In this document: positions 1-44,851 of the stretch, piece after piece
How positions within the stretch are numbered: position 1 is the stretch's first letter
How the letters are laid out: each line of letters starts with the position of its first letter
Source: Hydrolagus colliei
Lineage: Eukaryota
Direction of reading: 5' to 3'
Length of the DNA: 64,000 nucleotides
Assembly (NCBI GenBank): GCA_035084275.1
Contig: CM068761.1
Location: 8,680,001-8,744,000 of the forward strand
The notes under the pieces: generated by a model
What the model saw: only the letters and a program-made list of their open reading frames with translations
Database searches by the model: none
What the model was told of the DNA's origin: nothing
Position numbers and translations under genes: made by a program

Positions 1-28
1 AATGTTTTAATCTGAAGAGCTTGATAAA

Positions 29-2668: not shown

Positions 2669-3606
2669 AATGTTTCACAAACAGCCTTGAAATGAATGAT
2701 ACTTATATTTGGGAATTGTTGGCCAGGACTTCAAATGCTTTGTTCCCCATTTGTATTGTGGCATGGGATGCTTAGCATCCATATTAACAAGAAAATGATA
2801 TATGGTTTCAAGTGTAATCCAAAGGACGGCACCTCCAACAGCAAAGGACATACACATCAGTGCATTTCAGGAGGTGATCTACTCAGGTCTTCAGATTTGA
2901 AAGCTTGCTTGTATTGAACTCATCGCATGTGACAAATAAATGGACGTTTGTGGCAAGTCAGGGTCAAATAATTTGCACAAGCACAGAAACAAAGAACAGA
3001 CTTCAAAAAAACAAACTCACACGTGTAGTGTGGTAAAACTGAGATAAATAATAATACCTTTTTGAAAGTACCTTTCATTTAATGATGGCATTTCGTTTCA
3101 AATGATGCTTCACTGGATATATGACATATATTCTTCAGGCAAATGTGGATGCCAATTTGTGCACATTAATATCTTACAAGCAGCCTTGAAGTCAATGCCA
3201 ATTTTACTTGGGTCATTGCTGGACAGGGTATCAAGCGTTTTCTTCTTCATGTGCATAATGGCATGTGGTCATTGGTATCAATATAAACAGTAAAATTGGA
3301 TTTAGCTGAAACTCACATCGAAAGGTTGGCTACTACAACAATGCAGGACATCCCCATGATTGCATTGCAGAAGATGAGTTACCCCAGGTATCCAATTATC
3401 ATTATTGTAGTAGCATTATTTGGGAAATTATCAAACTTATTAACATAACATAGAAATATATGAATGAACAACAACAATAAAATTACATTTACAGAGCACC
3501 TTTCACATCAGGAAGACATCACAAGGCAGTGAACACTTCGGTCAGGACCCCAAAATGGCGGCGGCGTTGGAGCAGCAGGGTTAGATGGCGCCCCCGACAC
3601 AGCGGC

Positions 3607-3883
3607 CACAAGCGCAAGATGCCGAGTTACACCTCATACGTGTACAAGGTGCTGAAGCAGTTCCACGTGAACACAGGCAATTCATCATCAGCCATGAACA
3701 TGGTGAATTCGTTCATCAGTGATATCTTGGAGCAGATCGACTGCGAGGCCTAGTACCTGATCGAGTACAGCAAGCGGCAGATCATCTCATCATGCGAGAT
3801 CCAGACGGCGGTCAGGCCTCCACTGCAGGGTGCACCGGCCAAATACAGAAAGCACTGAAGCCATCACCAAGTACACCAGCTGA
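3607..3883 (+). pseudogene. H2B: Histone H2B pseudogene
   Basis: Translates as [68 protein letters not shown], then a frameshift, then AITKYTS*. This follows the H2B histone fold with an internal stop. Confidence 0.9.
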
Positions 3884-3959
3884 GGAGCCGGTTGGTTTGT
3901 GGCCTGTCACCACACTAGACCCAATCCCTGCCGCCGTCTTGACCATCATGTCCGAGAAA

Positions 3960-4109
3960 CTGCAGCGGCTGAAGGCCGAGCAGGAACTGCTCAACTCATC
4001 ACTTTTGGCCCTCACCTCCCACTTCACGCAGGTCCAGTTCCACCTCAATCTTATCATAAAGGCAAACGGTGACGACAAGGAGCAGCTGCTGGACGAGCTC
4101 AAGGACTTC
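3960..4109 (+). pseudogene. RUNDC1: RUNDC1-like N-terminal coiled-coil fragment
   Basis: LQRLKAEQELLNSSLLALTSHFTQVQFHLNLIIKANGDDKEQLLDELKDF resembles the conserved RUNDC1 motif (LLALxSHFAQVQFRL...LxELExF), recognised from memory without a database search. It stops abruptly in a TTA/TTG repeat. Confidence 0.75.
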
Positions 4110-5045
4110 ATTATTGTTATCGTTGTTTTTTTTGTCGCTGTTCATTATTCCCCCCACCTTTTTGCTCTCTTACCTTTCCCCCCTTTGCTTCCCTGGCTCC
4201 ATTTGCCCCTTTTATATCCCGCACTTTTCCCTCCTTTCTATGGCTCTCTCTGGCAGGAGCCAGAGAGAGGCATTTTTCCTCTTTCTTTGCCCCTCGTAGC
4301 TCCTTTCTCTTCCCCCCCTCTTTGCCCACCTTTCCTTCCTCTTGTTCTTTCACCCCTACCCTCTATATCCCCTTCCCTTCCTCTTCCCTCCCTCTCTTCC
4401 CCCTTTTCTTCCATCTCTTATGCCCCCTCTTCTCCCTCTTCCTTCCACCTGCTCCCTTTCCCCCCATTCATTCCCTTTTCCCTCTCTCTTCCCCCTCATC
4501 CTCTTTGCTCACCCATTTCTCTGTGATTGTAACGCCACACCTTTCGCTCCCTCTCCACCCCTAGCCCCCTTTCTCCCCCCCCTTTTCCGCCCTGACTTTA
4601 CCACACCGTACCTTTCCCTCCCTCTCACCCATTACCCGCTTTTAACCCTTTCTCCCCTAACCCCACTTCCACGACTGTTTGTGCGATGCTGCTGTGCACA
4701 ATTTGGCTGCCATGCTTTGCCCATAATATACAGTCAATTCTCCTACTCTCCTTCCCTCAATCCCTCCCCACCTGCTCTGTTTCCTACCTGACTTTACAGC
4801 GCCTTGGAACATCCTTCCGACTTGAAAGGCGCTATATAAATGTAATTTTGTTGTTGAGAAATAATTGAACATATTCATAGACCTTTATAATATATGAACA
4901 AAGGGTAAGACGTATATCATTCGGCCTATTGAATTCAGACAATTATTTTGATGGGCCATTCTTTTACAAATAAACATGTATTCAAGCTGTTCCTCCCTAT
5001 TTCTCAATGTGTTTCCTGCCATTTTCAGGGATCAAGCCCTGAGTA

Positions 5046-5400: not shown

Positions 5401-6589
5401 CCTTCCCTCCTTGAAATCTCATCTAAAGTCCTGTCTCTTTCACCGTGTCTCGGTGATGCTTCCACCCATCCCAATTTAAATCCAATCACAGCACAGATAA
5501 CTAGTTTTGGTGCACACTCCCAATATGCACCTTGCTGCATAAATGCAATGTGTTCTTCCATTTGTCTGTCATTATTATTGCCTTGTACTATGGTGGAGCA
5601 CGTGCCATAAAATTAATCTAAATGTGGTAGTCTTGATAGTATATTGCCCTTGAACCGTCTCACCATCACTAACATCAATTCTCAAAGACATGAGATTTTG
5701 CTGCCTTTGTGGTGTTGTATAAGAAGCCAGGCAGTAGGATAGAGCACAAATGTAATGACGTTGGTTGTGGAGGCACCAACTAGGATAACTTATGATACAT
5801 TCTCGATTTACATTGCATATCTATCATGATTTTTATCAGCATATCCAGGGCAAACACTGCCATCCATTGTTTGGAAGTTTAGATTTTTACAATAAGATAC
5901 TAATCGAAGTTGCTGTTTGCTCAAGTGTATATCAGTGTTTCCGTGAAATTAATTGGAAAGTGAAAGAAAGTTTGTCTTGGAGTCCTGTAGAACTACCGGT
6001 ATACGTCAGATTATTTACTATTTTTGTCGTTCAATTGTGGAGTGATATTGCTGCTGCAAACAACCGCTGTGTTTGGCTACAAAAACAGACACTACATGTA
6101 GCAACAACCTGAGTAGATTTTATATAAGCTATGAAATTCAACCTGCCACTCATTCAAAACTGTTGCCTCCCTGAGAGTGAGGAAACGTTTTTATTTATTG
6201 TGAGGCAATACCCTCTACCGATTGAGTGTTCCTCGCCTGAATCTGCCCACATCTGATCTATCAGAAGCTTGGGTAGAAATAAAAGGTGTGATAAAATGTA
6301 CCCTATCAATGTAACATGTTAGAGTTTGCTGAAATTGTCTCTCTGTGAAATTCATGCTGAACTATGAGAACCTCTCTCTCTACTTCAATAGGCACATCTA
6401 TACTTTCCACTTAAATATTCATGAACATCACAAACATGAATTGAACGCAAGAACATGTTGCTATTACTTTAAAAATATTTATGCACAATTAAAACAAATA
6501 TTAAGCAATAACACCAATCTTTGTATCGTCTGGGCGCCTCAAAGCGCTTCACACAATTTACTATAAAGTGAACTGACTACATATGTGCG

Positions 6590-8668: not shown

Positions 8669-9200
8669 ATATTTTGTATATATTTATTAAACTTTAAACT
8701 TTTATTTTATTTTCAAAACTAGTTGTGTTGCTTTTAGTCTTCATTTAATATTAGTGTAAGGAAATTTAAACCAGCAATGTACGGAAGGAACGTAGCCCCT
8801 GTGGATAGTATGGGGGCCTTTGGTAATTTAGGTTTTGCAATATGGTATTCAACTTAAAATCCCAATTTTTAAGAGCACATGCCCAACGTTACTTGGGCAG
8901 ATCCAGTACTGATAATTACTTAAAGAGATATACCTCCACTATGTTAAAGTGATTTCCCAAGTATCGTTAGATTTAAACACACGTTTTTGCCGTTTCAATA
9001 TGTGTTTTCCGGCATTAGGCCCCCTAAAATAGAATATATAGTGGTGGTGAACGATGACCAAAGTAACAGTTTTGATTCCTCCTCCCCCATGAAGTAGAAT
9101 CAACACTTTCAGTTATTATTCACAAATTAGCGCACGAGGCAGAATGTGTAAACGTGGATCTCGAGCCTGATTGGTTGAGATAACCATACATAAACATTAA

Positions 9201-9998
9201 CAGATGCAAATTCTTAGATTAGGAGAGCAGCAAACTATATTATGTGAATGAAGAACATGGTCCGCTCACTGCCGGTTGTGCTCAGTGTATCATTCATTTT
9301 ATTGTTTTTATTGGTTCAATCAATTATACTATTCTCTTCCAACCAATCAATTCTCTCAATTCAAACATAACTATAGGCTATTATATTATTACTTTAAACA
9401 GATCTTGGGATTCATTCCATATGAGTTACGTAAACATCTCGATTAGATCACTAAAAGATGTTGGGGAAACTCAGCAGGTCAAACAGCATCCAAAAGAAAT
9501 TTGCTTGATTGTGTGTTCTCCAAACCCCGTTTCCACAGCCACATTTTGGATGCTGTTTGACCCGCTGAGCTTCCCCAGCATCTTTTGTTTTTGTTTCAGA
9601 TTCCCAGCATCTGTAGTATTTTGTGTTTCGATGACATCAGTACCAGCTGCGATTGGTGTATTCCAGACAAGTCGTTGTCCAGCGTCCTCTTACCATAGTT
9701 CCATTTCAATGATTAAACTTGTTTTGATATGTACCAACAAAGAACAGTTCTATTTAACGGTTATATCGTACCGATTTAATGTTTTGCAATAAAGTGAAAA
9801 TATTGACTAGAATTGACAGCAGCTTAAACGACTGAAGGAAACTGCAGAGACACCTGCGGGTGTTAAAAGGCTGCAATGCGGAAGTTGGTACGTTACTCAA
9901 CCGCAGGTTTGGAGCTCACTGGCCACCGGGTGGGGAGGGGAGTAACTCTACAATGAGCTCTTCGGAGTGGGTACATTTTGATGTTTCATTTGCATCTG
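9201..9998. promoter_or_regulatory. Candidate 3' enhancer of cluster 1 (two inverted E-box/octamer composites)
   Basis: CAGATGCAAAT at 9201-9211, ATTTGCATCTG at 9988-9998 and CACCTG at 9851-9856. The motif positions are retained in the paralogous clusters. Confidence 0.45.
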
Positions 9999-10515
9999 AT
10001 GGTCCTATAACCTTTCAATAGGTTGTCACTCCTGTTGACAACACAAAAGCTCATCATAGTGATCGCGTGAAGCACGTGAGTAATACTTTGCTTTAGTTCT
10101 ATAGAGATTGGCGGGCTGGAGAGGCAGTGGGCAAAAGTATCTCAATGAATTATCTTCCAAACCCAAGGTGGATGTACAGCATTGTTTGGGAGAGCATTTC
10201 ACAGGTGCTCAGCCTGTAACAACAATCATGACTTAACACTGAATATTGTGCGATAATTTGAATTCACTTTAATTTTAATTGATGTTGAGTTTACTTTGAA
10301 GGATGGCTCTTTTTAACAACAACATTAAAAGGCTCTCAAATAGCGACCAAGATTGAGATGTTTCCAAAATTCTGCGCGATAGATTTCAAACGCATATCAG
10401 TATTGGGTGCATGTTTAATTAATAACATCAAATTCGTGTTTCAGACAAAATAATAAAATCAAAAGAAGAAATTGAAGAAAAATAGTCATGGCACGGAGGG
10501 CAATGAAAGAGTCAT

Positions 10516-10521
10516 TTTATT
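10516..10521 (-). terminator. Polyadenylation signal AATAAA of C1
   Basis: tttatt on the plus strand, ~300 nt past the stop. The same position is conserved in C3 and C4. Confidence 0.7.
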
Positions 10522-10822
10522 AAACCGCATATTTCTTATTTCTGTAATGGTACACAGGGGGCGTGATTCTTGCAGCGTGAACTCACTGGAAAATACAACC
10601 ATTCAATTCCAGCAAACAAATTATTGTTGGCGTATTGTAATACTCTACTTAAAAATCTAAGAGCTTATTTCCTGCTGTTAGAAATTTACAGAAGGTATTT
10701 CAGCGAATTTGTTTCTGAATTTGGGCATTCCTGACAAAATTACTTTAATTTCCAAAGAACCATTATTGTTAATGTAGATTGCCAAAGATAAATTCGTTAC
10801 TTTGGGAATGCTATGTTCCTGA

Positions 10823-11145
10823 TTAGGAACAACTGGATCTGGCGATGGTTTTTTCCAGCGGAGTCCCCCGAGTCTCGTGTGTGACCAGACAGGAATACAG
10901 CTCGTGTGACTCCCACTCGGAGGCTGGCAGAGTCAGATAACTGCTCACACTGTACGTGTTGTCCACCTCCTGCTTGATCGCACTCGTTTCAACACCTTCA
11001 CTTCTGGCACTGCCATCCACAGTCCACTTGACCTCCACAGCTCCCGGTGTAAAATCATTCACCAGACACACAAGGGTCGCCTTGCTCTTTGCTGTGATTT
11101 GATCTGGTGACGGCGGCAGGACAGTCACCGAAGGGGCCCGTGGGT
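10823..11145 (-). CDS. IGLC: Ig light chain lambda/type II constant exon, cluster 1 (intact)
   Basis: Acceptor tttgtcttccag|AC, then (N)[12 protein letters not shown]...[10 protein letters not shown]...KW...YSVSSYLTL...YSCLVTHE...ARSSCS*. This is a C1-set Ig domain with a penultimate Cys. Exon length is 323 nt. Confidence 0.95.
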
Positions 11146-13172
11146 CTGGAAGACAAATGTGGATAAAAAAAAATGAAATTAATTTTTTAACATTTTAAGT
11201 TAGAAACGACCTGTTGAAAAACACGACAAAACTTCAGGATCGCCAATAAATAATCCTATACATTATTTCACATTCCTGTAAATGGTAAAACATTTTCTTG
11301 TGCAGAGTTTTAGACGGTACTTTACAACTGTGACAAAGTGTAACAATGTAAAGGGAACAGTGAGTGTTGGTGGTCATCATACACCATCGCACACCATTCA
11401 TTATTATACTATCAATAGTTTGCTGCTGAGAGCTCAACAACAATAATAATAATCCTCGCATTTGATATAGTGCTCTTCATGTCACAAATTTCTCAAAATA
11501 TACTGTAGGCAGCCAATTGCGCACAGCAGTGTCTCACAAACTGTCGTGGATTGAAATGACCAATTTATAATAGGATTGTTTGCAGTGGGGAACACACGTT
11601 CAAAATTTTCCTCAATTTAAATAATTATTAAATACAATCATAAGAAATAACACTGGACACTATATATCGGGTCACAAGGAGAGAAAGCGCAGTGAAACGT
11701 CATGATTAACTCGATCGAGTTTGTATAGAGAGTAACAACCTGAAAATAGGAAGCAAATAAATGTTTTCCTTCAGACCAAACACTCTGCACTGTAAAACAA
11801 TGCAGGAGCACAATCAGAATGCAATGTTTGATTAGTTGCAGAGAGAAGCTTCAGATTTCAGAATAATTTATTTGGCACAGTATTTGCTGATTTCAGTTCA
11901 AAATGTATAACGCACAATACACAAATTAGAATCCGTTTAATATGATGCCTGAGGGAAATAATAAAGTTAAGTTTCAAGCGAGAAAATATACTTTCACCAG
12001 ATTGAGCCGACGCTCAGCCTCTGTCTTTAATGAGCGATGATTGCCATCTGATCAACTGCAGCAACTTGTGGCGAAAATCATGATATTATTGAGTCTCTCC
12101 AATGGTGCTGCCCTTAGCGATATCAACAATGGAATTCGGAGAAAATAATACGTTTCTAAAGTTAGAAATCTGAAGATAAATGTGCGCAATATATTGTAAG
12201 GTAGAAACGTATTTTAATGGGGGTAGTGGAGGAGAAAATAAAACATTTGAAGAAATCCGAGTAGAACTCTGGAATAGAAAAATGCTAAAATGCGAAGATT
12301 GGTACTGGCAGCAACACAGAGCAGATTATAACATTTGGGTTATTTTGAAAATAATGGATTCGTTTCGAAAGCATAATGATGTTGAGAACAAACTCCCCTA
12401 CATTTATTCTCTATCATCCACATATCAGTTTCACATAATGTTACTCAGTCTCAAAGAAGTTTACATTGTCAAAATGATCATTACAGACGAATACTATTTT
12501 CAGGGAATCCGGTTCCCTCTAAGATTGAACCGCTCACCAATCGGTCCATTGGACCCCAGCGACAGTCACCAGATGGAAAGATGCTGTTGATCTCCTTATG
12601 ATGGAGATTCTTTTAAATATCACTTCGTGGTCACAAACTGGGAAAGAGGTTCACAGGCAAACATAGAAATTAAATAATCTGGCACAAAGAGATTTAACTT
12701 CAATCTCAGGTGTGAAGTGTTAACTAATTTCCCTGGTGTAGCTCATTCTTTACCAGGATCTATAAGCGGTGTTAGAGTGAATCTGGCATCTTCAGTCCTT
12801 CAGAATGTTAAATATAAATATCACCACGGTTACCTCCGCTTGACTAATTTCATTCCTTTCTCCACCCTTTTACCTTTGTTAGTTTGCTGTAATATTTGTC
12901 TAAATTTCTTCACAGATTTTCAATTGAGGTCTGTTTTGGTTTAAAATTTGCGATTACCAAATAAAAGGTTTATCATTCGGAAGATTTTCACCAAGTGCGA
13001 CTATTACAGAAACCGTGTGAAACAATATCGAATATAGACAAACATACAAATATATTTGGACGTTCTCCTGACCTGAAAGGCTCTGTACAATAGCAAGGTT
13101 GTTGTTATTATTGTGGAAACTGTCGAAGAATTAGATCAAATGATCATTGAAAGTCGAAACAAGATAACTTAC

Positions 13173-13508
13173 TTTTCAAACTCAACTTGGTCCCTTTACC
13201 AAAGATGAAGCTGCTATACCCGGAAAAACAGTAATAATCGGCAGCGTCCTCCGGCTGCACACTGCTGATGGTTAAATGCATGGCGTTGCTCGATGAGTCC
13301 ACAGAACCAGTGAATCGATCAGGAATCCCCTGACCTCTGGTGGAGCTATCATACCAAACAAACACAGGGGCGCTGCCAGGCTTCTGCTGGTACCAGTTCG
13401 TGTAGCCTCCGATGCTGCCTCCGGACATGGTACAGGTGATCTTGACGGTGTTTCCCGGGGAGGTTGAGATGGACGGTGGCTGAGTCAGGGTAACAGCTGC
13501 GGTTGTTC
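13173..13508 (-). CDS. IGLV: Germline-joined VJ exon, cluster 1 (intact)
   Basis: [44 protein letters not shown]...[21 protein letters not shown]. Acceptor ctccag|GA and donor A|GTAAG. V runs in frame into FGxG with no RSS. Confidence 0.95.
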
Positions 13509-13618
13509 CTGGAGAAGTAACAGGTCCAAGATTAGTCACACTGTAGAGATGTCACACTGTAGAACTAGCTGTACATAGTGAAGGTAATTGAGATCAGTGC
13601 GGATTCCGCTGCGCTTAC

Positions 13619-13799: not shown

Positions 13800-13944
13800 T
13801 GTCCTCCGGCTTCCATCCTCCAATAGGAATCCTTGTTCTGAACAGCAGATGGAACATCATGCAGATTTGAACAGTTTTACTGCCCGGATTTCAAAAGATG
13901 TTTCATAGTAACATTGAATAGTGTTTAAATCTGAACAGCTTGAT

Positions 13945-14224
13945 AAAATATTAATAATCCTTGATTTGATATGGCGCTTTTCACGTCTTCTAGACATCTG
14001 ATTGCGCTTCACAGAATATTCTGTATATATGTGGGCGAAAGGGGCAGCCGATTGCGCAAACCAGTTTACAACGAAAGTGGTAAAACGACCAATTTATATT
14101 GGGTATTTTCGGGATTATTATCAGGCGTGGAGTAAGGAAATTTACCCAAGGTTTCGCCCTGACTGGCTTCAAACCCAGATCTCTTGATTGTAAGGCAAGT
14201 GCTCTAAACACGGAGCTACAGGAT
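13945..14224 (-). mobile_element. tRNA-derived SINE (paralogue of 29-305)
   Basis: Same tRNA-like head (14150-14224) and L2-like tail. Confidence 0.7.
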
Positions 14225-16216
14225 ATCAGAAAGTGATGCTAGTTTTCATTTGTACTGTGAAACAGCTTTTTAAGTAGCACACACTTCAATTATTGATAGT
14301 ATCGTTAAGAAGTCTTAATCCTATTAAGTATTCACGTATTTCACGGCTTTGCGGTGTATGAATCCTGCAAGATTCGCTTGCCCATATACAAAGAGATTTA
14401 TTCGCTTGTGATGCTTGTTCCGATGAAAGATAATTTGTAGTTGGGAAAGTTTAAACTTTTCATTCTGTTAACCTTTACACATCGACAAGCCACACCTGAA
14501 CGTGTACAGACTTCACATCAGGTAACAGGTTTCCTCACATATACGGTTCATCTTTTTCTGAAATACGTTTTCCAATTCACCTTGTGGCAAGTTGCAGACC
14601 TGCCCTCACGCTAGGATTCCCTTTACTGCACCATGCCTCACTGCAGATGTGATACAATAGAGCCACAATGAATTGTAGCGGCTACTTTTTCTGATAAAAC
14701 ATTAACAGCTGTTAATCGACCTTTCCTTTCAGGGCATAAAAACACAAAAACATAAATCGCATCTTCTGGATATGTCACTGACATCGAAATTGTGATGTAG
14801 ACTGGAACGGGAACTGTAAAAGCAGAGTAATGTTACACCACCCATTAAAAGAAGAACAGTCCTCAAGTGAATAATTCCCCCAGAGTTCCCACTCACGTGA
14901 ATTCAATTCTGTCCATGCGCTGATCCCATGCACGTTTGGGACAAGTCAAAGTCAAATAACTTTCACATGCGTGGAAAACCCAGCCCTGCATTCATTTCTA
15001 AACTGAATACATGTATATTATATTTACTGTTAAATGAAATAAATAGATAATACTTTTGACAAAGCACCTTTCATATCAACAACAACAACAACTTCGATTT
15101 AGATGGCGCCTTCCATGCCAGGCGGCATTTCACAGCGCTTCACAGAAGCGGATCCCGGTACCAAGCTAGTGAAGGAGAAGAAAGGTGACCAAAGGCACGG
15201 TCGAAAAGAAAGGTCTTTAGCTGTGAAGAGGACTTGTCACGATCCTCGCAGAATATACTGTACATGCTGTTTAGAAAAATGTAGCAGCCTATTTGTACAT
15301 GGTGATGTTTCACAAACAGCCTTGAAATGAATGATACTTTTATTTGGGAATTGTTGGACAGGACTTCAAATGCTTTGTTCCCCATTTGAATTGTGGCATG
15401 GGATGCGTAGCGTCCGTATTATCAAGAAAATGATAGTTGGTTTCAAGCGTAATCCAAAGGATAGGACATACACATCAGTGCATTTCAGAAGGTGATCTAC
15501 TCAGGTCTTCAGATTTGAAAGCTTGCTTGTATTGAACTCTTCGCACGTGACGATTGAATGCACGTTTGTGACAAGTCAAGGTCAAATAATTTGCACATGC
15601 ACAGAAACCCAGAACAGACTTCGAAAAAACAAACTCACACGTGTATTGTGTTAAAAATGAGATAAATAATAGTACCTTTTAGAAAGTACCTGTCATTTAA
15701 TGATGAATTTTCGTTTCAAATGATGCTTCACTGGATATATGACATATATTCTTCAGGCAAATGTGGATGCCAATTTGTGCACATTAATGTCTTACAAGCA
15801 GCCGTGAAATCAATGCCAATTTTACTTGGGTCATTGCTGGACAGGGTATCAAGCGTTTTCTTCTTCATGTGCATTATGGCATGTGGTCATTGGTATCAAT
15901 ATCAACAGTAAAATTGGATTTAGCTGAAAGTCACATCGAAAGGTTAGCCAATACAGGACATCCCCATGATTGCATTGCAGAAGCTGATTTACCCCAGGTA
16001 TCCAGTTATCATTATTGCAGTAGCATTATTTGGGAAATGATCAAACTTATTAACATAACATAGAAATATATGAATGAACAACAACAATAAAATTACATTT
16101 ACAGAGCACCTTTCACATCAGGAAGACATCCCAAGGCAGTGCACACTTCGGTCAGGACCCCAGAATGGCGGCGTCGGAGCAGCAGCAGGGTTAGATGGCG
16201 CCCCCGCCACAGCGGC

Positions 16217-16493
16217 CGCAAGCGCAGGATGCCGAATTACAACTCATACGTGTACATGGTGCTGAAGCAGGTCCACGCGAACACAGGCAATTCATCACCA
16301 GCCATGAACATGGTGAATTCGTTCATCAGTGACATCTTCGAGCGGATCGCCTGCGAGGCCTAGTACCTGATCGAGTACAGCAAGCGGCAGATCATCTCAT
16401 CATGTGAGATCCAGACGGCAGTCAGGCATCTGCTGCCGGGTGTGCCGGCCAAATACAGAAAGCACGGAAGCCATCACCAAGTACACCAGCTGA
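16217..16493 (+). pseudogene. H2B: Histone H2B pseudogene, copy B
   Basis: [38 protein letters not shown]...EIQTAVRHLLPG...AITKYTS*. It has the same internal TAG as copy A. Confidence 0.9.
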
Positions 16494-16569
16494 GGAGCTG
16501 GTTGGTTTGTGGCCTGTCACCACACTAGGCCCAATCCCTACCGCCGTCTTGACCATCATGGCCGTGAAA

Positions 16570-16719
16570 CTGCAGCGACTGAAGGCCGAGCAGGAACTGC
16601 TCAACTCATCACATTTGGCCCTCACCTCCCACTTCACGCAGGTCCAGTTCCATCTCAATCTTATCATAAAGGCAAACGGTGACGACAAGGAGCAGCTGCT
16701 GGACGAGCTCAAGGACTTC
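16570..16719 (+). pseudogene. RUNDC1: RUNDC1-like fragment, copy B
   Basis: LQRLKAEQELLNSSHLALTSHFTQVQFHLNLIIKANGDDKEQLLDELKDF. Confidence 0.75.
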
Positions 16720-18440
16720 ATTATTGTTATTATTGTTTTATTTGTAGCTGTTCATTAATTGCTCCAACTTTCTGCTTTCTAACGTTTCCCCGTTTTTCTT
16801 CCCTCCATCCTTTTGCCACTTTTATCTCCCCCACTTTTCCCTCCTTTCTTTGCCTCTCTCTGGCTTCCTCTTTATTTCCCACTTTCTTTCCCCCTCTTCC
16901 CTCCTTTCTCTACCCCCTTCTTTCCCTACCTTTCCTTCCTCTTGTTCTTTCACCCCTACCCTCTATATCCCCTCCCCTTCCTCTTCCCACCCTCTCTTCC
17001 CCCTTTTCTTCCATCTCTTATGCCCCCTCTTCTCCCGCTTCCTTCCATCTGCTTCCTTTCCCCCCATTCTTTCCCTCTTCCCTCTCTCTTCCCCCTCATC
17101 CTCTTTTCTCACCCATTTCTCTGTGATTGTAAACCGCCCACCATTCGTTCCCTCTCCACCCTAGCCCCCTTTCTCCCCACCTTTTCCTCCCTGACTTTAC
17201 CACACCCCACCTTTCCCTCCCTCTCACCCACTACCCTCTTTTAACCCTTTCTCCCCTAACCCCACTTCCACGACTGTTTGTGGGATGCTGCTGTGCAAAA
17301 TTTGTCTGCCATGCTTTGCCCACAATATTCAGTCAATTCTCCTACTCTCCTTCCCTCAATCCCTCCCCACAGGCTCTGTTTCCTACCTGACCTTACAGCG
17401 CCTTGGAACATCCTCCGAACATGAAAGGTGCTCTATAAATGTAATTATGTTGTTGAGAACTGATTAAACATGCACATATTCATAGACCTTTAAAATATAT
17501 GAATGAAGGGTAACAAGTATATCATTTGGCCTATTGAATTTAGACACGTATTTTGAAGGGCCATTCTTTTACAAATAAGAATGTATTCAAGCTGTTCCTC
17601 CATATTTCTCAATGTGTATCCTACCACTTACAGGGATCAAGCCCTGAATAGTGGCTACTATTCTCCAGTTTAAAATTGATGAGGTGAAGGCCGCCTTATT
17701 TGGATCCTGTCTGCAATTCTTCACCCAAACATCTGACAACAACACTATTAACAGATTCATTTTTCACCACCCAGAGCTTGTACAAAGCCTTGGTATTCTC
17801 TTGGATGCTGATCTTTCCTTATCCCAATATGGACACCAAGCACAGTTCTACTTTTTCGCACTTCCATTACATTGAAAAACACTGCCACTGCGTCACCACA
17901 CATGCTGCCAAAACCATCATGAAAGGCCTTCAGCATGCTTTCGTCACATCCCTTGGGAAAACTGTCTCAGAAACACGTTGCCTTACCATGCCTTCCCTCC
18001 TTGAAATCTCATCTAAAGTCCTTTCTCTTTCACCGTGTCTCGGTCATGCTTCCACCCATCCCAATTTCAATCCAATCACAGCACAGATGACTAGTTTTGT
18101 TACATATTCCCTAAACTCAACTTACAACATAAATGCAATGTGTTCTTCCATTTGTCTGTCATTATTATTGCCTTGTACTGTGGTGGAGCACATGCCATAA
18201 AATTAACCTAAATGTGATAGTCTGAAGTATATTGCCCTTGAACCGTCTCACCATCACTAACATCAATTCTCAAAGACATTGGGATTTTGCTGCCTTTTTG
18301 GTGATGTATAGGAAGCCAGGCAGTAGGATAGAGCACAAATGTAATGACATTGATAGTGCTTGTGGAGGCACCAACGACGATAATTTACAATGAATTAATG
18401 ATACAATCTCGATTTACATTGCACATCTATTATGATTTTC

Positions 18441-18966
18441 ATCACATCTAGGCTCATGGATCCTCCTGCACTAGGCACTGGAACCACATCACTCCCACCC
18501 TTGCTCATCTCCAACGGCTCCCCATCTTCCGTAGGGTTAAATTCCAGATCCTCGTCCTCACTTTGAAGGCCATCCATGGCCTTACACCCACCTATGTTTC
18601 CAACCTACTGACTCCCTATCAAACTGCCCATCGTGGCCGTTCAGTGGGCTCGTTCCTGCTCCATACACCCTGCCCGAAACTGACCAACCATCGGTGGCCG
18701 GGCTTTCAGCCATTCTGTCCCACATTCTGGAACTCCATCCCGCAACCCGTTCATCTCTCTGCCTCCCTTTCTTCCTTTAAGGCCAGTCTGAAGACCTTCC
18801 TCTTGGACCGTGCCTTCCCCACCCATTCAAACACTCCCCCCTTTCCTACTCTCCTGCACACGACCCCCTCGCCCTATACACAATCGACACCTGACCTGAT
18901 TGTTCAGCGCCTTGGGACATCCTCCAGACATGAAAGGCGCTCTATCAATATAATTTTGCTGTTGTT
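18441..18966 (+). mobile_element. L2 3' fragment (remnant of the element at 6590-8668 after deletion)
   Basis: Matches 8106-8668. It is joined directly to the homologue of ~5835. Confidence 0.85.
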
Positions 18967-19105
18967 GTCTTATGTATATACTTATTAAACTTTAAACTTT
19001 TATTTTATTTTAAAAACTAGTGGTGTTGCTTTTGGTCTTTATTTAATATTAATGTAAGAAATTTAAACCAGAAATATACTGAAGGAACGTAACCCCTGTG
19101 GATAG

Positions 19106-20314
19106 TAGGGTCCGACGATATATCGCTAAAACCCGATATAATTTGCATATCGATACGCATAAACAGGCATTTAAAATATCGATATATCGAAAAACGATAT
19201 ATCGAGGTAAAAATCGGGATGCGAGCACACTGAACTACAAGAACCAGAATACTCATCTCTATACACAATGCACAGACCGAGGTGCAAAGCCGCCATATTG
19301 TATTCACAGTCCTCGAATACAATATAAAGGTATGCAAGTGCTGGGGGGTGAGAGAGACAGCAGGGGGGGGAGGGGGACGAGGAGAGAGACTGCTGGAGGG
19401 GGGGGTGAGGGGGAGAGAGATGGCTGGGGGAGGGGGAGAGAGATGGCTGGGGGGAGGGGGAGAGAGACGGCTGGGGGGAGAGGGCGAGAGAGACGGCGGG
19501 GGGGAGGGGGAGCGATACGGCTGGCGGGAGGGGGAGAGAGACGGCTGGGGGGGGGAGAGGGGGAGAGATATGGCTGGGGGGGAGAGGGGAATAGAGACGC
19601 CTGGGGGGAGGGTCAGAGAGACGGCTGGGGGCTGGGGGGAGAGACGGCTGGGGGGAGAGGAGAGGGGGAGAGAGACGGCTGGGAGGAGGGGGAGAGAGAC
19701 GGCTGGGGATAGGGGTAGAGAGACGGCTGGGGGTGGAGAGACGGCTGGCTGGGGGGGAGCGAGACGGCTGGGGGGGGAGGAGAGGGGGAGAGAGACGGCT
19801 GGGGAGAGGGGGAGAGAGACAGCCGGGGGGAGAAAGATGGCTAGGGGGGTGAGAGAGACGGCTGGGGGGGGGAGGGAGAGATAGACGGCGGGGGGTGGGG
19901 GAGGGAGAAATAGACGGCTGGGGGGGGGGGTGGGGGAGAGAGAGGACGGGGGTGGGTGGAGAGAGAGAGGGACGGGATGGGTGGGAGAGACGGGGTGGAT
20001 GTGATAATATACAGATAGAAGAGATGGGGGGGATGTGAGAGGGGAGAGAGGGAGATTGACACAGAGACACACAGACAGAAAAACGCAGAGATAGAGAGAG
20101 TGAGAAACACAGAGAGAGAAAGATATTTACCTCCTGAGAAGATAGGCCCCGAATGCGCGCGCACCCGGAATGCGCACGCACCCGGAACCCGCGCGCACTC
20201 CAAATCCGTGCGCATGCGCAGTACGAAAAACCCGAAAATATCGATATTTCGATATATCTCGATATGGGCCTAACGATATATTTAATCGGAAAATTTCCAT
20301 ATCGACGGACCCTA
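19106..20314. mobile_element. Non-autonomous hAT-type element (MITE family 1), copy 1
   Basis: Termini TAGGGTCCG...CGGACCCTA with an exact 8-bp TSD gtggatag (19098-19105 and 20315-20322). The empty site is at ~8800-8812. Subterminal CGATAT repeats are present. Confidence 0.92.
19340..20000 (+). repeat. G-rich minisatellite (GGGGGAGAGAGACGGCT-like units) inside the MITE
   Basis: Dozens of imperfect ~15-20-nt units. It produces spurious Pro/Ser and Gly/Arg ORFs. Confidence 0.9.
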
Positions 20315-20714
20315 GTGGATAGTATGCGGGCCTTTGGTAATTTAGGTTTTGCAATATGGTATTTCACTTAAAATCACATTTTTTAACAAAACATCCCCAA
20401 CGTTACTTGGGCAGATCCAGTACCGATAATTACTTAAAGAGATATACCTCCACTATCTTAAAGCAACTTCCCAAGTATCGTTATCTTTAAACACCAGATT
20501 ATGTCGTATCAATATGTGTTTTCAGGCATTAGTCCCCCTAAAATAGAATATAGAATGGTGGTGAACGATAACCAAAATAACATTTTTGAATCCTCCTCCC
20601 CCATGAAGTGCAATCAACACTTTCAGTTATTATTCACAAATTAACCCATGAGTCAGAATGTGTAAACGTGGATCTTGGGCCTGGTTGGTTGTGATAACCA
20701 TTCATAAACATTAA

Positions 20715-21513
20715 CAAATGCAAATTCTTAGATTAGGAGAGCAGTAAACTATATTATGTGAATGGAGAACATGGTCCGCTCACTGCCGGTTGTGCTCAGT
20801 GTATCATTCATTTTATTGTTTTTATTGGTTCAATTAATTATTACAAGTAATTCTCCCAATTCAAACATAACTATAGGCTATTATATTATTACATTAGACA
20901 GAGCTTGGGATTCATTCCATACGAGTTACATAAACATCTCGATTACATCAGTAAAAGACGCTGCCGAAACTCAGCAGGTCAAACAGCATTCAAAAGACAT
21001 TTGTTTGATTGTGTTTGATTGCGTGATACTGTTCACCAAAACACGTTTCCACAGCCACAGTTTGGATGCTGTTTGACCTGCTGAGCTTCCCCAGCAACTT
21101 TTGTTTTCGTTTCAGATTCCCAGCATCTGTAGTATTTTGTGGTTCGATGACATCAGTACCAGCTGTGATTGATGTATTCCAGAAAGTCGTTGTCCAGCTT
21201 CCTCTTACCATAGTTCCATTTCGAGCATTAAACTTGTTTTGATATCTACCAACAAAGAACAGTTCTATTTCATGGTTATATCGTACCGATTTAATGGTGT
21301 GCAATAAAATGAAAATATTTACTATAATTAACAGCAGCTTAAACGACTGAAGGAAACTGCAGAGACACATGCGGGTGTTAAAAGGCTCCAATGCAGAAGT
21401 TGGTACGTTACTCAACCACAGGTTTGGAGCTCACTGGCCACGGGGTGGGGAGGGGAGTAACTCTACAATGAGCTCTTCGGAGTGGGTACATTTTGATGTT
21501 TCATTTGCATCTG
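20715..21513. promoter_or_regulatory. Candidate 3' enhancer paralogue, cluster 2
   Basis: CAAATGCAAAT at 20715-20725 and ATTTGCATCTG at 21503-21513. Confidence 0.4.
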
Positions 21514-22337
21514 ATTGTCATATAAACTTTCAATAGGTTGTGACGCCTTTTGGCAACACAAAAGCTCAGCATAATGATCGAGTGAAGCACTTGAGTAATA
21601 CTTTGATTTAGTTCTCTAGAGATTGGCGGGCTGGAGAGGCAGGGGGCAATTGTATCTCAATGAATTATCTTCCAAACCCATGGTGGATGTACAGCATTGT
21701 TGGGGAGAGCATTTCACACGTGGTCAGCTTGTAACAACAATCATGATTTAACAGTGAAGATTGTGCGATATCTTGAATTTACTTTAACTTTAATTGATGT
21801 TGAGTTTACTTTGACGGATGGTTCTTTGTAGCAACGTGAAAAGACTCCCAAGTAGCGACCAAGATTAAAATGTTTCCAAAATTCTACTACGTAAATTTCA
21901 AACGCATATAAGTACTGCTTGCATGTTTAATTGATAAGATCAAATTCGTGTTTCAGATAAAATAACAATGAAATGAAAAGAAGAAATAGTTTTAAATAGC
22001 CATGGCACGGAAGGCAATGAAAGAGTCATTTTACTAAATATATTATTTCTTAGTCATGTAGTGTTACACAGGGGGGCTTGATTATTTCAGCCTGAACACA
22101 CTGTAAAGTACAACCATTGAATTCCAGCAAACAGACAAATTATTGTTGCCGTATTGTAATTCTCTGCTTATAAATCTAAGATCTTATTTCCTTTCGTTGG
22201 AAATTTGCCGGAGGTATTTAATCGAATTTGTTTCTCAATTTGGGCATTCCTGACAAAATGACTTTAATTTCCAAACAATCATTAACACAATTCTTAGCCT
22301 TAATGTTATTGCCAAAGTTACTCTATATGTTCCTAAT

Positions 22338-22638
22338 TTAGATACAACTGGATCTGGCGATGGTTCTTTCGAGCGGAGTTCCCCAAGTCTCGTGTTTGAC
22401 CAGACAGGAACAGAGCTGGTGTGACTCCCACTCGGAGGCTGGCAGAGTCAGATAACTGCTCACACTGTACGTGTTGTCCACCTCCTGCTCCATCCCACTC
22501 GTTTCAACACCACAGTCCACTTGACCTCCACAGCTCCCGGTGTAAAATCATTCACCAGACACACCAGGGTCGCCTTGCTCTTCGCTGTGATTTGATCTGG
22601 TGATGGCGGAAGGACAGTCACCGACATGCCCCGTGGGT
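22338..22638 (-). pseudogene. IGLC: IgL constant exon, cluster 2 (frameshifted)
   Basis: 301 nt against 323 nt in the intact exons. A 22-nt deletion after KWTV removes DGSARSEG and shifts the frame. The polyA signal is changed to AGTAAA (22030-22035). Confidence 0.92.
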
Positions 22639-24664
22639 CTGGAACAAAAATGTCCTTAAAAAAGTTTAAATTATTTTTTTTCATCTTAATTTACAATCGA
22701 TTGTTGAATAGCACGACAAAACTTCAGCATCACCAATAAATAATGCTATACATTATTTCACATTCCTGTAAATGGTAAAACATTTTCTTGTGCAGCGTTT
22801 CAGACGGTACTTTTCAATTGTGACAAAGTGTAACAATGTAAAGGGAACAATGAGTGTTGGGGGTCATCATACACCACCACACACCATTCATTATTATACT
22901 ATCAATAGTTTGCTGCAGAGAGCTCAACAACAATAATAATAATAATCCTCGCATTTGATATAGTGCTCTTGATATCACAAATTTCTCAAAATATACTGTA
23001 GGCAGCCAATTGCGCACAGCAGTGTCTCGCAAACTGTCGTGGATTGAAATGACCAATTTATTATAGGATTTTTTGCAGTGGGGAACACACGTTCAAATTT
23101 TCCTCAATTCAACTAATTAGTAAATACAATCATAAGAAATAACACTAGACACTAAATGTCGCGTCACAATGAGTACGTGGCGGGAGGCGCTGAGTGAAAG
23201 CGCAATTAAACATCATTATTAATTCGATAGAGTTTGTATAAAGAGTAAGAAAATAGGAAGAAAATAAACGTTTTCCTTTGGAACAAACACTCTGCACTGA
23301 CAAACTATTCAAGAGCTCAATCAGAATCCAATGTTTGATTAGTTACAGAGAGGGGCTTCCGATTTCACAATAATTTATTTGGCACCGTATTTGCTGATTT
23401 TAATTCATAATTAACAGCGCAAAATACACAGGTCACAATAACCAATACACAAATCACAATACACAAATCGGAATCCCTTTAATATGGTGCCTGATGGCAA
23501 CAATAAAGTTAATTTTCAAGGAAGAAAATGTATTTTGACCAGATTGAGCCGGCGCTCTGCCTCTCTTTAATGAGCGATGATTCCCATCTGACCAACTGCA
23601 GCAACTTGTGGTGAAAACCATGATATTATTGAGTCTCTCCAATGGTGCTGCCCTTAGCGACATCAACCACGGAATTGGGAGAAAATAATGCCTTTGTAAA
23701 ATTAGAAATCTGAAAATAAATGCGTTCAATAAATGGTAAAATAGAATTGTATTTTAATGGGGGTAATGGGGAGAAAATAAAATATTTGATGTAATCCGAA
23801 TAGAACACTGGAATAGAAATGTTTTTAAAATGCAAACAATGTTTATGGCAATAACGGGGAGCAGATTATAACATTTGAATTATTCTAAAACGAGTTGATT
23901 AGATTTGAAAGCGTAATGATGCTGAGAACAAACTCCGCTACAGTTATTCTATATCATCCATATATTAGTTACACATAATGTTACTCAGTCTCAAAGAAGT
24001 TTCAATTTTCAAAATGATCAGTTAGTCACGGATGAACACTATTTTCAGGGAATCCGGTTCCCTCTGAGATTGAACCGCTCACCAATCGGTCCATTAGTTC
24101 CCAGCGACAGTCACTAGATGGAAAGATGCTGTTGATCACCTTATGATGGAGATTCTTTTGAACATCACTTCGTGCTGACAAACTGGGGAAAGAGGTTAAC
24201 AAGTAAACATAGAAATTAAATAATCTGGAACAAAGAGATTTAACTTCAATCTCAGGTGTGAAGTGTGAACTCATTTCCCTGGTGTGGCTCATTCTTTACC
24301 AGGATCTCTAAACGGTGCTTCAGTGAATCTGACATCTTCAGTCCTTCAGAATGTTAAATATAAATATCACCACGAATATCTCTTCTTCGCTTATGTCATT
24401 CCTTCCTGCACCTTTTTACCATTGTTAGTTGGATGTAATATCCGTCCAAATTCTTCACAGAATTTCAGTTAACATCAGGTTTCCCGTGTTTGATTCTTTA
24501 ACATTTCCGATTTCCACATAAAACGTTTATGATTAGGAAACCAGATGCGACTATCACCGAAAGCGTGTGAAACAATATCGAATACAAATAAACATACAAT
24601 TATATTTGGACGTACTCCTGACGTGATCACAATAATCATCTAAAGTCGAAACAAGATTACTTAC

Positions 24665-41289: not shown

Positions 41290-41399
41290 TCTTGCCCTGC
41301 CCTGCCCATACTCCCAACATGCTTGTATTGTTTTACTGCAACTATTATACATTTTATAATTGTGCATCTCTTTTCCCCTCAATCACAGATTTCTCACTC

Positions 41400-43545: not shown

Positions 43546-44851
43546 TAAAAACATTGAAGAAAATCGAGAAAGAGCTTATCACATGTTTATTTGTAAATCA
43601 ACTGCCCTACAAAATAAAGGTACAAGTAGAATGGGCTGACCGTCATACTTCTTACCCCACAATCACAAGTTGACTACGTGGAATAATTATGACCTATTAC
43701 CAAAATAATAGTAAGAAAACTGAAGACCTGGGTAAATCACCGACTGCAATGCAATCCTGGGGATTTTTAGAGGTGCGATCCTTTCACTTAGACTTCAAAA
43801 AAAATCTCATATGTTTGTTGATGTATATGTTAAGGATCACATGTAAATGAAGAAGAAAAGATCTGGTGTCCTGTCCTACAATTCCTCAAAATAAAATCAT
43901 CATTCACTTTAAGGCTGTTTGTAAGACGTTACCACACACAAGTTGACATCCACACGTGCATAACCAATATATATGATATATCTAGTGAGGCATCATGAAA
44001 CGTCCTCCGGAAATGAAAGGTACGATCTGAAACTATCATACTATCATCTATTTTTAAAATTTCTATCGCAGTACATGCAGGAGGTTTTCGACTTCATTCA
44101 CTTAATAGTTAGGATGAGAAATTGCTGTCTACTCAAACCTATATTTTCCCTTCCTCGAGTGTCTCTAGGAAAATCTCCCTACCCGAACAACTAATAAGTA
44201 TGACACCCGTGTCTACGGAAGCAAGCGAGGGAGCAAGGTAAATTAATTGTGGGTGGATTCCCAAACCATGGCTTCAGTGTGCCGGCAAATACAGACTTAC
44301 AGCTGTTGATGTTTCATCCTAGAATCTCCAGTACTATAGGGCAAAATGAGGCAGAGGCATTGGCACGTTATGGTTTATTCAACCCTGGTGAAGCCAATTT
44401 TCATTGCAAACATATTTAGTACGAGGTTATTTTCCAAGATTAGAAGAGAAATTCGTATCGGATATTATCTGACATTTGATTGGAAATTTCGCAATTTACC
44501 AAAGTGCAAAGCTTTCGCACAGTGCAGCCTCAACCCACTATTTCAGATGAAAGAAACAAAAATATAGTTAATCATAAAAGTAGGTGGGGAATGATATCTG
44601 ATCGCTGACCAGATTCCTGTGTGAGGATACTGAACTGATTCAATTAATATTTGGCGTCAGAAATCGTTAGTTAGTCATTTTTTAATTTAATACATGTGCC
44701 ACAAAGCAGTACTTCCAGACAGTCGTCCACAATATCTACTGGAACCTATATATTTCCTTCCACGAGTGTCCCCATGAAAATCTCCCTTTCGGAACAAGCA
44801 ATACGTATCCAAAAGTCAAAGCAAACAGCGTGGATGTCTATTTGTGTGTGT

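What the first reader, a model, noticed from the sequence alone, without database searches (positions are those of the whole stretch)
16064..17507. 1.4-kb TSD-flanked retro-cassette fusing histone H2B and RUNDC1-like sequence between two L2 tails
Seen: an exact 15-bp direct repeat brackets, in order, a minus-strand L2 3' tail, a decayed H2B, about 75 nt of linker, a RUNDC1-like coiled-coil fragment ending in a TTA/TTG repeat, a CT-rich tract and a plus-strand L2 tail. The same cassette is at 3469-4887. The paralogous spacer at ~43620-43720 has one copy of the target and no cassette. Known: TPRT creates TSDs, and L2 machinery recognises L2 3' tails. Inference: a chimeric RNA, antisense to both host genes and ending in an L2 tail, was retroposed as one unit. 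It may be an undescribed SINE-like family or transduction that carries host-gene pieces.
Basis: partly seen in the sequence, partly recalled or inferred. Interest (0 to 1): 0.8.

Follow-up and report, generated by a model that had tools for sequence, protein, structure and literature searches.

The report
Two-tailed L2 retro-insertion carrying H2B and RUNDC1
A 1.4-kb piece of junk DNA in a shark-type antibody light-chain locus looks like a single accident of an L2 jumping-gene enzyme that copied bits of two host messenger RNAs; it is a neat mechanistic curiosity, and nothing shows it to be a new mobile family.

Summary
The cassette (16079-17455; copy at 3469-4856) contains, in order: a minus-strand L2-type 3' tail, a disabled H2B, a 67-nt linker, 54 codons of RUNDC1 exon 1, a short TTA/TTG run, a 530-bp CT tract and a plus-strand L2 tail.

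Three corrections apply:
- The flanking repeat is about 46 bp, not 15 bp. It abuts the terminal (TTG)n of both tails.
- H2B and RUNDC1 are sense on the + strand, the same polarity as the right tail.
- The two copies lie inside a duplicated Ig light-chain cluster unit (about 90% identical). They therefore record one insertion, not two.

A related old L2 copy (43657-43698, minus strand) has the target once and no cassette.

Best reading: one L2 target-primed reverse-transcription event with nicks about 46 bp apart.
- One nick primed on an L2-tailed RNA. The cDNA then ran into RUNDC1 and H2B RNA, either by template switching or from a pre-fused RNA.
- The other nick primed on a second L2 tail ("dual" or twin priming).

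No pol III head and no further copy were found. Genome-wide dispersal could not be tested. Interest is moderate to low.

The parts
16033..16078 (.). Left copy of the 46-bp target-site duplication (GGAAATGATCAAAC...AAATATATGAATGAA). It ends directly against the terminus of the left tail.
   Evidence: single copy in the related L2 at 43657-43698
16079..16164 (-). Inverted arm: a complete L2-type 3' tail (hairpin GCGCCTT/AAGGCGC plus terminal TTG repeats). Its 3' end points outward to the left.
   Evidence: nhmmer E 1e-22, model positions 3-85; alignment with 8 other tails
16165..16213 (+). GC-rich 49 nt of uncertain origin. It may be the arginine-rich N-terminal tail or 5' end of the H2B copy. 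It is not L2 3'UTR.
   Evidence: no significant match to L2 3'UTRs; reading frames
16214..16490 (+). H2B pseudogene fragment (histone fold to C-terminus). It has an in-frame TAG at 16361-16363 and a frameshift before the last ~15 codons, both shared with copy 1. No histone 3' stem-loop is present.
16491..16557 (+). 67-nt linker of unknown origin
   Evidence: no match in the window apart from copy 1
16558..16719 (+). RUNDC1 fragment: 54 codons of the conserved N-terminal coiled-coil motif (LNSSLLALTSHF.QVQF). It breaks off inside exon 1, before FAF.G.
16720..16759 (+). T-rich run, (ATTATTGTT)2.7, followed by TTTATTTGTAGCTGTTCATTAAT. This resembles the reverse complement of the left junction (unexplained).
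16760..17290 (+). Polypyrimidine (CT-rich) low-complexity tract of about 530 bp, with no relative elsewhere in the window
17291..17455 (+). Right arm: L2 3'UTR-like sequence (from about 17325) and a complete L2-type tail (17373-17455) ending GTTGTTG. Same polarity as H2B and RUNDC1.
   Evidence: nhmmer E 1.9e-23
17456..17507 (.). Right copy of the target-site duplication. It starts 0-1 nt after the right tail terminus, carries a private 6-nt insertion (GCACAT) in this copy, and ends with the exact 15-mer.
3423..4902 (.). Copy 1 of the whole structure: TSD 3423-3468, cassette 3469-4856, TSD 4857-4902. It was produced by duplication of the Ig light-chain cluster unit, not by a second insertion.
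43657..43698 (-). Unfilled counterpart of the target in another copy of the same old L2 family: one copy of the ~46-nt segment and no cassette

Best explanation
This is one L2-driven target-primed reverse-transcription event into an older, dead L2 copy. The whole light-chain cluster unit was duplicated later, which copied the cassette as DNA.

Inferred steps:
1. The two strands were nicked about 46 bp apart, which produced the 46-bp TSD.
2. The bottom-strand 3' OH primed on the (UUG)n end of an L2-tailed RNA. The cDNA ran through the tail, some L2 3'UTR and a CT-rich stretch.
3. The cDNA then continued on RUNDC1 mRNA (entering inside exon 1) and on an H2B mRNA. This happened either by successive RT template switches or because those RNAs were already fused to the L2-tailed RNA.
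4. The top-strand 3' OH primed independently on a second L2 tail ('dual priming', or twin priming on an upstream tail of the same RNA). This produced the ~86-nt inverted arm.
5. The two cDNAs were joined near 16165.

Shown:
- the insertion, its single-event boundary and the TSD;
- both outer ends are exact L2 3' termini;
- the gene identities and orientations;
- the later DNA-level duplication.

Inferred: the priming order, template switching versus a pre-fused RNA, and the use of two RNAs.
For: - The 46-bp direct repeat abuts both tail termini. Its alignment score of 44 compares with a shuffle maximum of 38 in 2000 trials. The outer 13-mer matches 11-12/13 in exact register.
- The joined flanks are colinear with a related old L2 that lacks the cassette.
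- Both arms match the full tail model, including the conserved hairpin and the TTG repeats.
- The arms are only 80% complementary and differ by an indel. This fits two source RNAs.
- H2B and RUNDC1 have the same polarity as the right tail. Published surveys of L1 chimeras assign same-orientation parts to template switching or RNA fusion, and opposite-orientation parts to twin priming (PMC13174262).
- Dual priming at both nicks has been proposed for L1 (PMC2837659).
- Double template jumps giving TSD-flanked tripartite chimeras are documented (PMC2104539).
- Zebrafish L2 makes TSDs, occasionally long ones, and adds 5' extra nucleotides by template jump (PMC2666801).
- No sub-piece has its own TSD of 8 nt or more.
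- The RUNDC1 piece ends inside exon 1, so the break is not a splice site.
- The H2B piece keeps a CpG o/e of 0.8-0.9, which is compatible with copying from mRNA not long before the duplication.
Against: - There is only one independent event, so nothing can be replicated.
- Several template switches are needed (L2, then the CT tract, RUNDC1, possibly the linker, then H2B).
- The CT tract, the linker and the 49-nt GC stretch have no identified source.
- The H2B piece differs from canonical H2B at about a third of its residues. It already had a stop and a frameshift before the duplication. That would also fit copying from an older, pre-assembled pseudogene locus.
- A 46-bp TSD is longer than the usual 20 bp or less for zebrafish L2.
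- The middle of the TSD is unexpectedly divergent.
- The internal stretch 16736-16759 resembles the inverted left junction and is not predicted by this model.
- The LINE's membership of the L2 clade rests on recalled sequence hallmarks, not on a tree.
Confidence: 0.5

Rival explanations
1. The cassette is a copy of a pre-assembled composite unit: a transcribed chimeric pseudogene locus, or an undescribed non-autonomous L2-dependent family (SVA-like). L2 retroposed it as one RNA via one of its tails.
For: - The structure is bounded by one TSD, and a functional-looking L2 tail sits at an end.
- The stop codon and frameshift in H2B, and five changes at otherwise near-invariant RUNDC1 motif positions, are shared by both copies, so they predate the duplication.
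- A CT-rich tract combined with an antisense SINE/LINE piece recalls the layout of SVA (knowledge, and the mention).
- The internal relic-like junction at 16736-16759 could be an older L2-type 3' junction from a source locus.
Against: - The 5' end of such an RNA would have to coincide, to within 0-1 nt, with the outward terminus of an inverted L2 tail. That is roughly a 1-in-500 coincidence for random 5' truncation over 1.4 kb.
- No pol III head or other promoter feature was found.
- The window has at least 17 L2 tails but no independent second copy.
- No cassette-like ORF appears among 1.8 and 5.8 billion proteins. This is weak evidence, because pseudogene ORFs are rarely called.
- The in-window second copy was made by segmental duplication.
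Confidence: 0.17
2. Stepwise nesting. An ordinary plus-strand L2-tailed insertion (with or without the gene pieces) made the 46-bp TSD. Later, a short 5'-truncated minus-strand L2 fragment landed exactly at its 5' junction. The H2B-RUNDC1 retrocopy may have landed separately inside.
For: - L2 tails are very dense here, about one per 3-4 kb, so inverted neighbours are common.
- Nested TE insertions are the rule in this window. Examples are the CR1 piece at 1401-2667, present in copy 1 only, and an L2 inserted into another L2 at 49431-49560.
- The (ATTATTGTT)n run after RUNDC1 looks like a separate L2-style 3' end.
Against: - No second TSD flanks the left arm or the H2B-RUNDC1 block; the longest shared flanking word is 7 nt.
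- The left arm's terminus touches the TSD with no intervening nucleotide, which requires an exact-boundary hit.
- L2-type LINEs are stringent and need the hairpin tail (PMC4176376). The H2B-RUNDC1 block lacks that hairpin.
Confidence: 0.15
3. Endonuclease-independent repair. A chromosomal double-strand break in this RAG/AID-exposed Ig locus was patched by end-joining, which captured several free cDNA or filler fragments (two L2 cDNAs, H2B, RUNDC1).
For: - The insert is a mosaic of unrelated short RNA-derived pieces with unidentified filler.
- The locus holds a germline-joined VJ, which by established knowledge implies recombinase activity in the germ line.
Against: - A 46-bp target duplication, and two L2 termini placed exactly at the junctions, point to priming from staggered nicks.
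- Captured fragments would be expected in random orientation and with random end points.
Confidence: 0.07
4. A DNA transposon of MITE or Pack type, whose terminal inverted repeats happen to derive from L2 tails and which captured host-gene fragments.
For: 56-nt terminal inverted repeats at 80% complementarity, flanking direct repeats, and captured gene pieces.
Against: - A 46-bp TSD is far outside the 2-11 bp made by known cut-and-paste superfamilies (established knowledge).
- The 'TIRs' are complete LINE tails ending in the LINE's own microsatellite.
- No other copy was found.
Confidence: 0.03

Closest known systems
L1 'dual priming' and twin-priming variants with a 5' inverted poly(A) (Meyer et al. 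2010, PMC2837659; Ostertag & Kazazian 2001)
   Same: A TSD-flanked insertion in which both outer ends are LINE 3' termini in opposite orientation. The inverted arm is short, and the two cDNAs are joined internally.
   Different: - Here the enzyme is a stringent, hairpin-recognising L2-type LINE, not L1.
- The inverted arm is about 86 nt of specific tail sequence rather than an uninformative poly(T), so the second priming on a LINE 3' end is actually visible.
- The TSD is 46 bp.
- Host mRNA pieces lie between the arms.
Bipartite and tripartite chimeric retrogenes formed by LINE RT template switching (Buzdin/Gogvadze, PMC2104539; the L1 chimera census, PMC13174262)
   Same: Copies of unrelated transcripts fused head-to-tail, in the same orientation as a 3' LINE part, flanked by one TSD.
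   Different: - The known cases involve L1 (mammals) or MGL (a fungus) and mostly small abundant RNAs such as U6, 5S and SINEs.
- Here the LINE is L2-like, in a cartilaginous-fish-type genome.
- The partners are internal fragments of two protein-coding mRNAs, plus a long CT tract.
L2-clade stringent LINEs and their SINE partners (UnaL2/UnaSINE1, ZfL2-1/-2; PMC4176376, PMC2666801)
   Same: The 3' tail has a conserved hairpin and short terminal tandem repeats. Insertions carry TSDs, are 5' truncated, and have template-jump extras at the 5' junction.
   Different: The cassette has no LINE coding part and no pol III SINE head. It has two tails and carries host-gene fragments.
SVA, LAVA and other composite non-autonomous retrotransposons
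   Same: A composite of a CT-rich repeat, an antisense repeat fragment, unrelated sequence and a LINE-recognised 3' end.
   Different: SVA is a multi-copy family with a defined 5' end, and it is mobilised by L1. Here only one insertion event is documented.

Membership tests
L2-type (stringent) LINE 3' tail | Conserved 3' hairpin | tested here: met
   The stem GCGCCTT/AAGGCGC is kept in 10 tails, including both arms, and 3 pairs show compensatory changes. Single-sequence folds are not better than shuffles.
L2-type (stringent) LINE 3' tail | Short tandem repeat at the extreme 3' end | tested here: met
   Both arms end in TTGTTG(TTG), like the other tails in the window.
L2-type (stringent) LINE 3' tail | The tail is physically linked to a LINE ORF2 C-terminus in other copies | tested here: met
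   ORF2 C-terminal matches at 7820-8342 and 58416-58744 are followed by tails at 8585-8667 and 59043-59125.
L2-type (stringent) LINE 3' tail | RT phylogeny places the LINE in the L2 clade | not tested
   No intact RT of this LINE is in the window, and Pfam finds nothing in the C-terminal fragments. The L2 assignment rests on recalled hallmarks (LHWLPI..RIEFKIL..HGLAPPYL, and the tail type).
TPRT retro-insertion | A target-site duplication flanks the whole insert, and an unfilled site exists | tested here: met
   The 46-bp duplication is shown. The colinear empty counterpart is at 43657-43698.
Twin / dual priming | The 5' segment is inverted relative to the 3' segment, inside one TSD | tested here: met
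   The left arm is on the minus strand and the right arm on the plus strand, and both abut the TSD.
Twin / dual priming | Dual priming specifically: the two arms derive from two RNA molecules | tested here: inconclusive
   The arms are 80% complementary and differ by an indel. Most differences are transitions, several at CpG, so post-insertion decay of identical arms, or two tails on one RNA, is not excluded.
Chimeric retrogene by RT template switching | Copies of different transcripts are fused in the same orientation as the 3' LINE part, within one TSD | tested here: met
   H2B, RUNDC1 and the right tail are all on the + strand. No sub-piece has its own TSD.
Chimeric retrogene by RT template switching | The parts are RNA-derived (introns absent) and the parent genes lie elsewhere | not testable with these tools
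   H2B genes are intronless, and the RUNDC1 piece lies within exon 1. No host genome is available to locate the parent genes.
SINE / non-autonomous retrotransposon family | Internal pol III promoter head (tRNA, 5S or 7SL) | tested here: not met
   Rfam gave no match at E up to 1, and ARAGORN found no tRNA.
SINE / non-autonomous retrotransposon family | Multiple dispersed copies with different flanks and TSDs | tested here: not met
   Within the window there are only the two copies made by segmental duplication. Genome-wide copy number is not testable here. The protein databases show only real RUNDC1s.
Cut-and-paste DNA transposon (MITE / Pack-type) | A short TSD of fixed length (2-11 bp) | tested here: not met
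   The TSD is about 46 bp.
Classical (L1-type) processed pseudogene | 3' poly(A) tail after a full 3' UTR | tested here: not met
   The H2B piece ends at its stop region, and the RUNDC1 piece ends inside exon 1. There is no poly(A).

The most novel reading that the evidence does not exclude
The cassette may be one member of an undescribed L2-dependent composite retrotransposon family of cartilaginous fishes (SVA-like). Such a family would carry H2B and RUNDC1 exon fragments and a CT-rich repeat between inverted L2 tails, and would still be mobilised as a unit.
Probability: 0.12. Interest if true: 0.7.

Novelty: new variant of a known kind. Interest (0 to 1): 0.35.

Why it matters
L2/CR1-type LINEs are 'stringent': they need their own 3' hairpin. 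For that reason they are thought to make few retrocopies of host genes. A TSD-bounded insertion carrying fragments of two host mRNAs on an L2 tail shows one way this can still happen, by RT template switching or RNA fusion.

L2 tails also have specific sequence, unlike poly(A). The inverted arm therefore gives unusually direct sequence evidence that the second nick can prime on a LINE 3' end. For L1, this 'dual priming' idea could only be postulated.

It remains a single, decayed locus with no sign of function. Its value is mechanistic and anecdotal unless more such insertions are found genome-wide.

Tried and rejected
- Whether the 15-mer alone is the TSD. Rejected: the 37 nt to its left on the right side is a diverged copy of the left flank, in exact register.
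- Extending the left arm into 16165-16213 as L2 3'UTR. No significant similarity.
- Separate TSDs for any pair of internal boundaries. None of 8 nt or more.
- Other copies of the H2B-RUNDC1 block, the linker, the pre-tail block or the CT tract in the window. None besides copy 1.
- A histone 3' stem-loop, or tRNA/5S/7SL heads. None.
- Cassette-like ORFs in public protein collections and exact-ORF look-ups. Only real RUNDC1s were returned, and the ORFs are not on record. This is uninformative about dispersal, because no cartilaginous-fish genome DNA can be searched with these tools.
- The fourth flank homologue (55858-56979) as a second empty site. Its homology stops before the target.
- Dating the insertion from TSD decay against H2B decay. 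Inconclusive. TSD mismatches cluster in the middle, and the H2B piece keeps a high CpG content, so its parent may be a divergent H2B variant.
- Pfam on the RUNDC1 piece. Only a chance-level FIMAH hit, E 0.1.
- A recalled resemblance of 17290-17323 to a shark SINE core could not be checked and is not used.
Full report
**Context**

The window is a cartilaginous-fish-type immunoglobulin light-chain region.
- It holds a germline-joined VJ ORF at 13144-13539 (-).
- Constant exons lie at 10823-11128 (-), 28618-28923 (-) and 53248-53553 (+).
- The region is packed with LINE debris.
- A self-comparison shows a cluster unit of about 12.6 kb tandemly duplicated at 85-90% identity (3-13076 versus 13922-24626).
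- Within that unit, 2670-5842 corresponds to 15305-18447 at 90% identity.

Both cassette copies, 3469-4856 (c1) and 16079-17455 (c2), lie in that block with their flanks. They therefore document one insertion followed by a DNA duplication, not two insertions. Sensitive BLASTN finds no further copy of any internal part in the window.

**Anatomy of c2**

- **Left arm, 16079-16164 (-).** It matches a profile built from the window's L2-type tails over the whole model, E 1e-22.
- **Right arm, 17373-17455 (+).** It matches the same profile with E 1.9e-23. Some L2 3'UTR-like sequence extends upstream from about 17325.
- **Both arms.** Each contains the conserved hairpin GCGCCTT/AAGGCGC, which is kept in 10 tails with a few compensatory changes. 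Each ends in TTG repeats like the other tails.
- **Link to a LINE.** The same tails follow LINE ORF2 C-termini at 7820-8342/8585-8667 and at 58416-58744/59043-59125. Calling this LINE 'L2' rests on recalled hallmarks; no RT tree was made.
- **H2B, 16214-16490 (+).** The two pieces either side of the in-frame TAG (16361-16363) hit PDB H2B chains at about 1e-13 and 1.6e-5. A frameshift precedes the last ~15 codons. Copy 1 shares both lesions. No histone 3' stem-loop is present.
- **RUNDC1, 16558-16719 (+).** These 54 codons hit 271 proteins. The best is frog RUNDC1 at 8e-18. Six full-length hits scanned against Pfam all carry a C-terminal RUN domain, and sources name one of them and the best hit RUNDC1.
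  - The fragment stops before the conserved FAF.G that follows in real proteins.
  - Exon 1 continues about 30 codons further.
  - The break is therefore inside an exon, not at a splice site.
- **Unassigned stretches.** These are the 49-nt GC-rich stretch 16165-16213, the 67-nt linker 16491-16557, the T-rich run 16720-16759 and the 530-bp CT tract 16760-17290.

**The flanking repeat**

The exact 15-mer is real; it occurs at 3454, 16064 and 17493 only. It is the best-preserved end of a longer duplication.
- In c1 the two copies are 46 nt each and align without gaps.
- In c2, 16033-16078 aligns with 17457-17507. It matches 11/13 at the outer end and 15/15 at the inner end, and this copy has a private 6-nt insertion.
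- The alignment score is 44. In 2000 shuffles the mean was 20.7 and the maximum 38.

The duplication begins 0-1 nt after the right tail's last TTG and ends directly against the left tail's last TTG. Both outer ends of the insert are therefore exact L2 3' termini pointing outward. The middle 17 nt of the repeat is much more divergent than its ends. Small indels in AT-rich sequence are the likely cause, but this is not fully explained.

**Empty site**

The left flank 15677-16010 and the right flank 17500-17777 match 44032-43715 and 43665-43389 on the minus strand, at 65-69% identity. Joining the flanks with one repeat copy gives a colinear alignment to the reverse complement of 43600-43760. The target is present there once (43657-43698) and nothing is inserted.

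tblastn shows that this homologue, and another at 55858-56979, are copies of an old L2 ORF2 C-terminal region. So the cassette inserted into a dead L2, and the 'paralogue' is a sister copy of that family. That still serves as an unfilled site. The homologue at 55858-56979 loses homology before the target.

**Mechanism**

No pair of internal boundaries has its own direct repeat of 8 nt or more. One TSD encloses everything. The genes have the polarity of the right tail, and the left tail is inverted.

A recent census of L1 chimeras states a rule. Same-orientation parts arise by template switching or RNA fusion. Opposite-orientation parts arise by a second reverse transcription primed from the other end of the break (PMC13174262).

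Meyer et al. proposed 'dual priming', in which two RNAs anneal by their 3' ends to the two nicks. They used it to explain L1 insertions with a 5' poly(T), and could not distinguish it from twin priming (PMC2837659).

Double template jumps giving TSD-flanked tripartite chimeras are documented for another LINE (PMC2104539). Zebrafish L2 shows several relevant behaviours (PMC2666801; PMC4176376):
- it needs its cognate hairpin tail;
- it makes TSDs in 80% of insertions, and a long TSD in 1 of 25;
- it adds 5' extra nucleotides that appear to come from template jumps.

The most economical reading is one L2 TPRT event with nicks 46 bp apart.
- The cDNA from the bottom-strand nick ran through the L2 tail, the CT tract, RUNDC1 and H2B.
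- A second priming at the top-strand nick, on another L2 tail, gave the ~86-nt inverted arm.
- The arms are 80% complementary and differ by an indel. This leans towards two RNAs but does not prove it.

Treating only the 15-mer as the TSD put the left tail at the insert's 3' end and made the genes antisense. It also left an unexplained 37 nt at the other end. That 37 nt is target sequence.

A unit RNA would need a 5' end that coincides with the outward terminus of an inverted tail. There is no pol III head. There is no independent copy. Searches of 1.8 and 5.8 billion proteins returned only genuine RUNDC1s, and the ORFs themselves are not on record.

The family hypothesis is not excluded, because no host genome could be searched. 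Three points keep it alive at roughly 0.1-0.2:
- lesions in H2B and RUNDC1 shared by both copies;
- the SVA-like composition;
- the internal stretch 16736-16759, which resembles the inverted left junction.

The H2B piece retains a CpG o/e of 0.8-0.9, against 0.56 for the window. Its many differences from canonical H2B may therefore reflect a divergent parent variant rather than long decay.

**Verdict**

It is wrong on polarity and unsupported on mobility.

This is a new variant of known processes, combining chimeric retrocopy formation with twin or dual priming. It is carried out by a stringent L2-type LINE and seen at a single, decayed locus without evident function.

Noticed in passing
window 13144-13539 (-); 10823-11128 (-); 28618-28923 (-); 53248-53553 (+); ~22330-22651: Ig light-chain clusters with a germline-joined VJ ORF and several near-identical constant exons. 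The cluster unit of about 12.6 kb is tandemly duplicated, and one further cluster is inverted.
   Followed up: partly
window 38597-41382 (-) and 45299-48476 (-); 1401-2667: Young CR1-like LINE copies with long ORFs (RVT_1 E 5e-34, about 96% identical to each other). A fragment at 1401-2667 is present in duplicate copy 1 but absent from copy 2, so it inserted after the duplication.
   Followed up: partly
window 19017-20367 and 50356-51494 (inverted): A large CT/proline-codon-rich minisatellite (PPAVSLPLSPP-like units) of about 1.2 kb. It is present twice, in opposite orientation, at about 80% identity.
   Followed up: no
window 16736-16759: The internal sequence TTTTATTTGTAGCTGTTCATTAAT resembles the reverse complement of the left junction (L2 tail end plus the first 9 nt of target), 20/24 with one gap. 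It could be a relic of an older L2 3' junction, or chance.
   Followed up: partly
window 16214-16490 and 3604-3880: The H2B pseudogene keeps a CpG o/e of 0.8-0.9, while the window average is 0.56. It has an arginine-rich rather than lysine-rich N-terminal region. This suggests a divergent (possibly germ-line) H2B variant as parent, or local hypomethylation.
   Followed up: partly
window 49384-49560: A plus-strand L2 3' end (tail at 49431) is inserted into the 3' part of a minus-strand L2 (ORF 49509-50198). Its junction TTG|AGAA is the same as that of the cassette's right arm.
   Followed up: no
window ~4250-4275: Copy 1 of the cassette has a small palindromic insert (ctctctggcaggagccagagagag) in the CT tract that copy 2 lacks.
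   Followed up: no
window 5842-8154: About 2.3 kb is present in duplicate copy 1 but missing from copy 2 (18447/18452). It includes the ORF2 C-terminal part of a younger L2. This is either a deletion in copy 2 or an insertion in copy 1.
   Followed up: no
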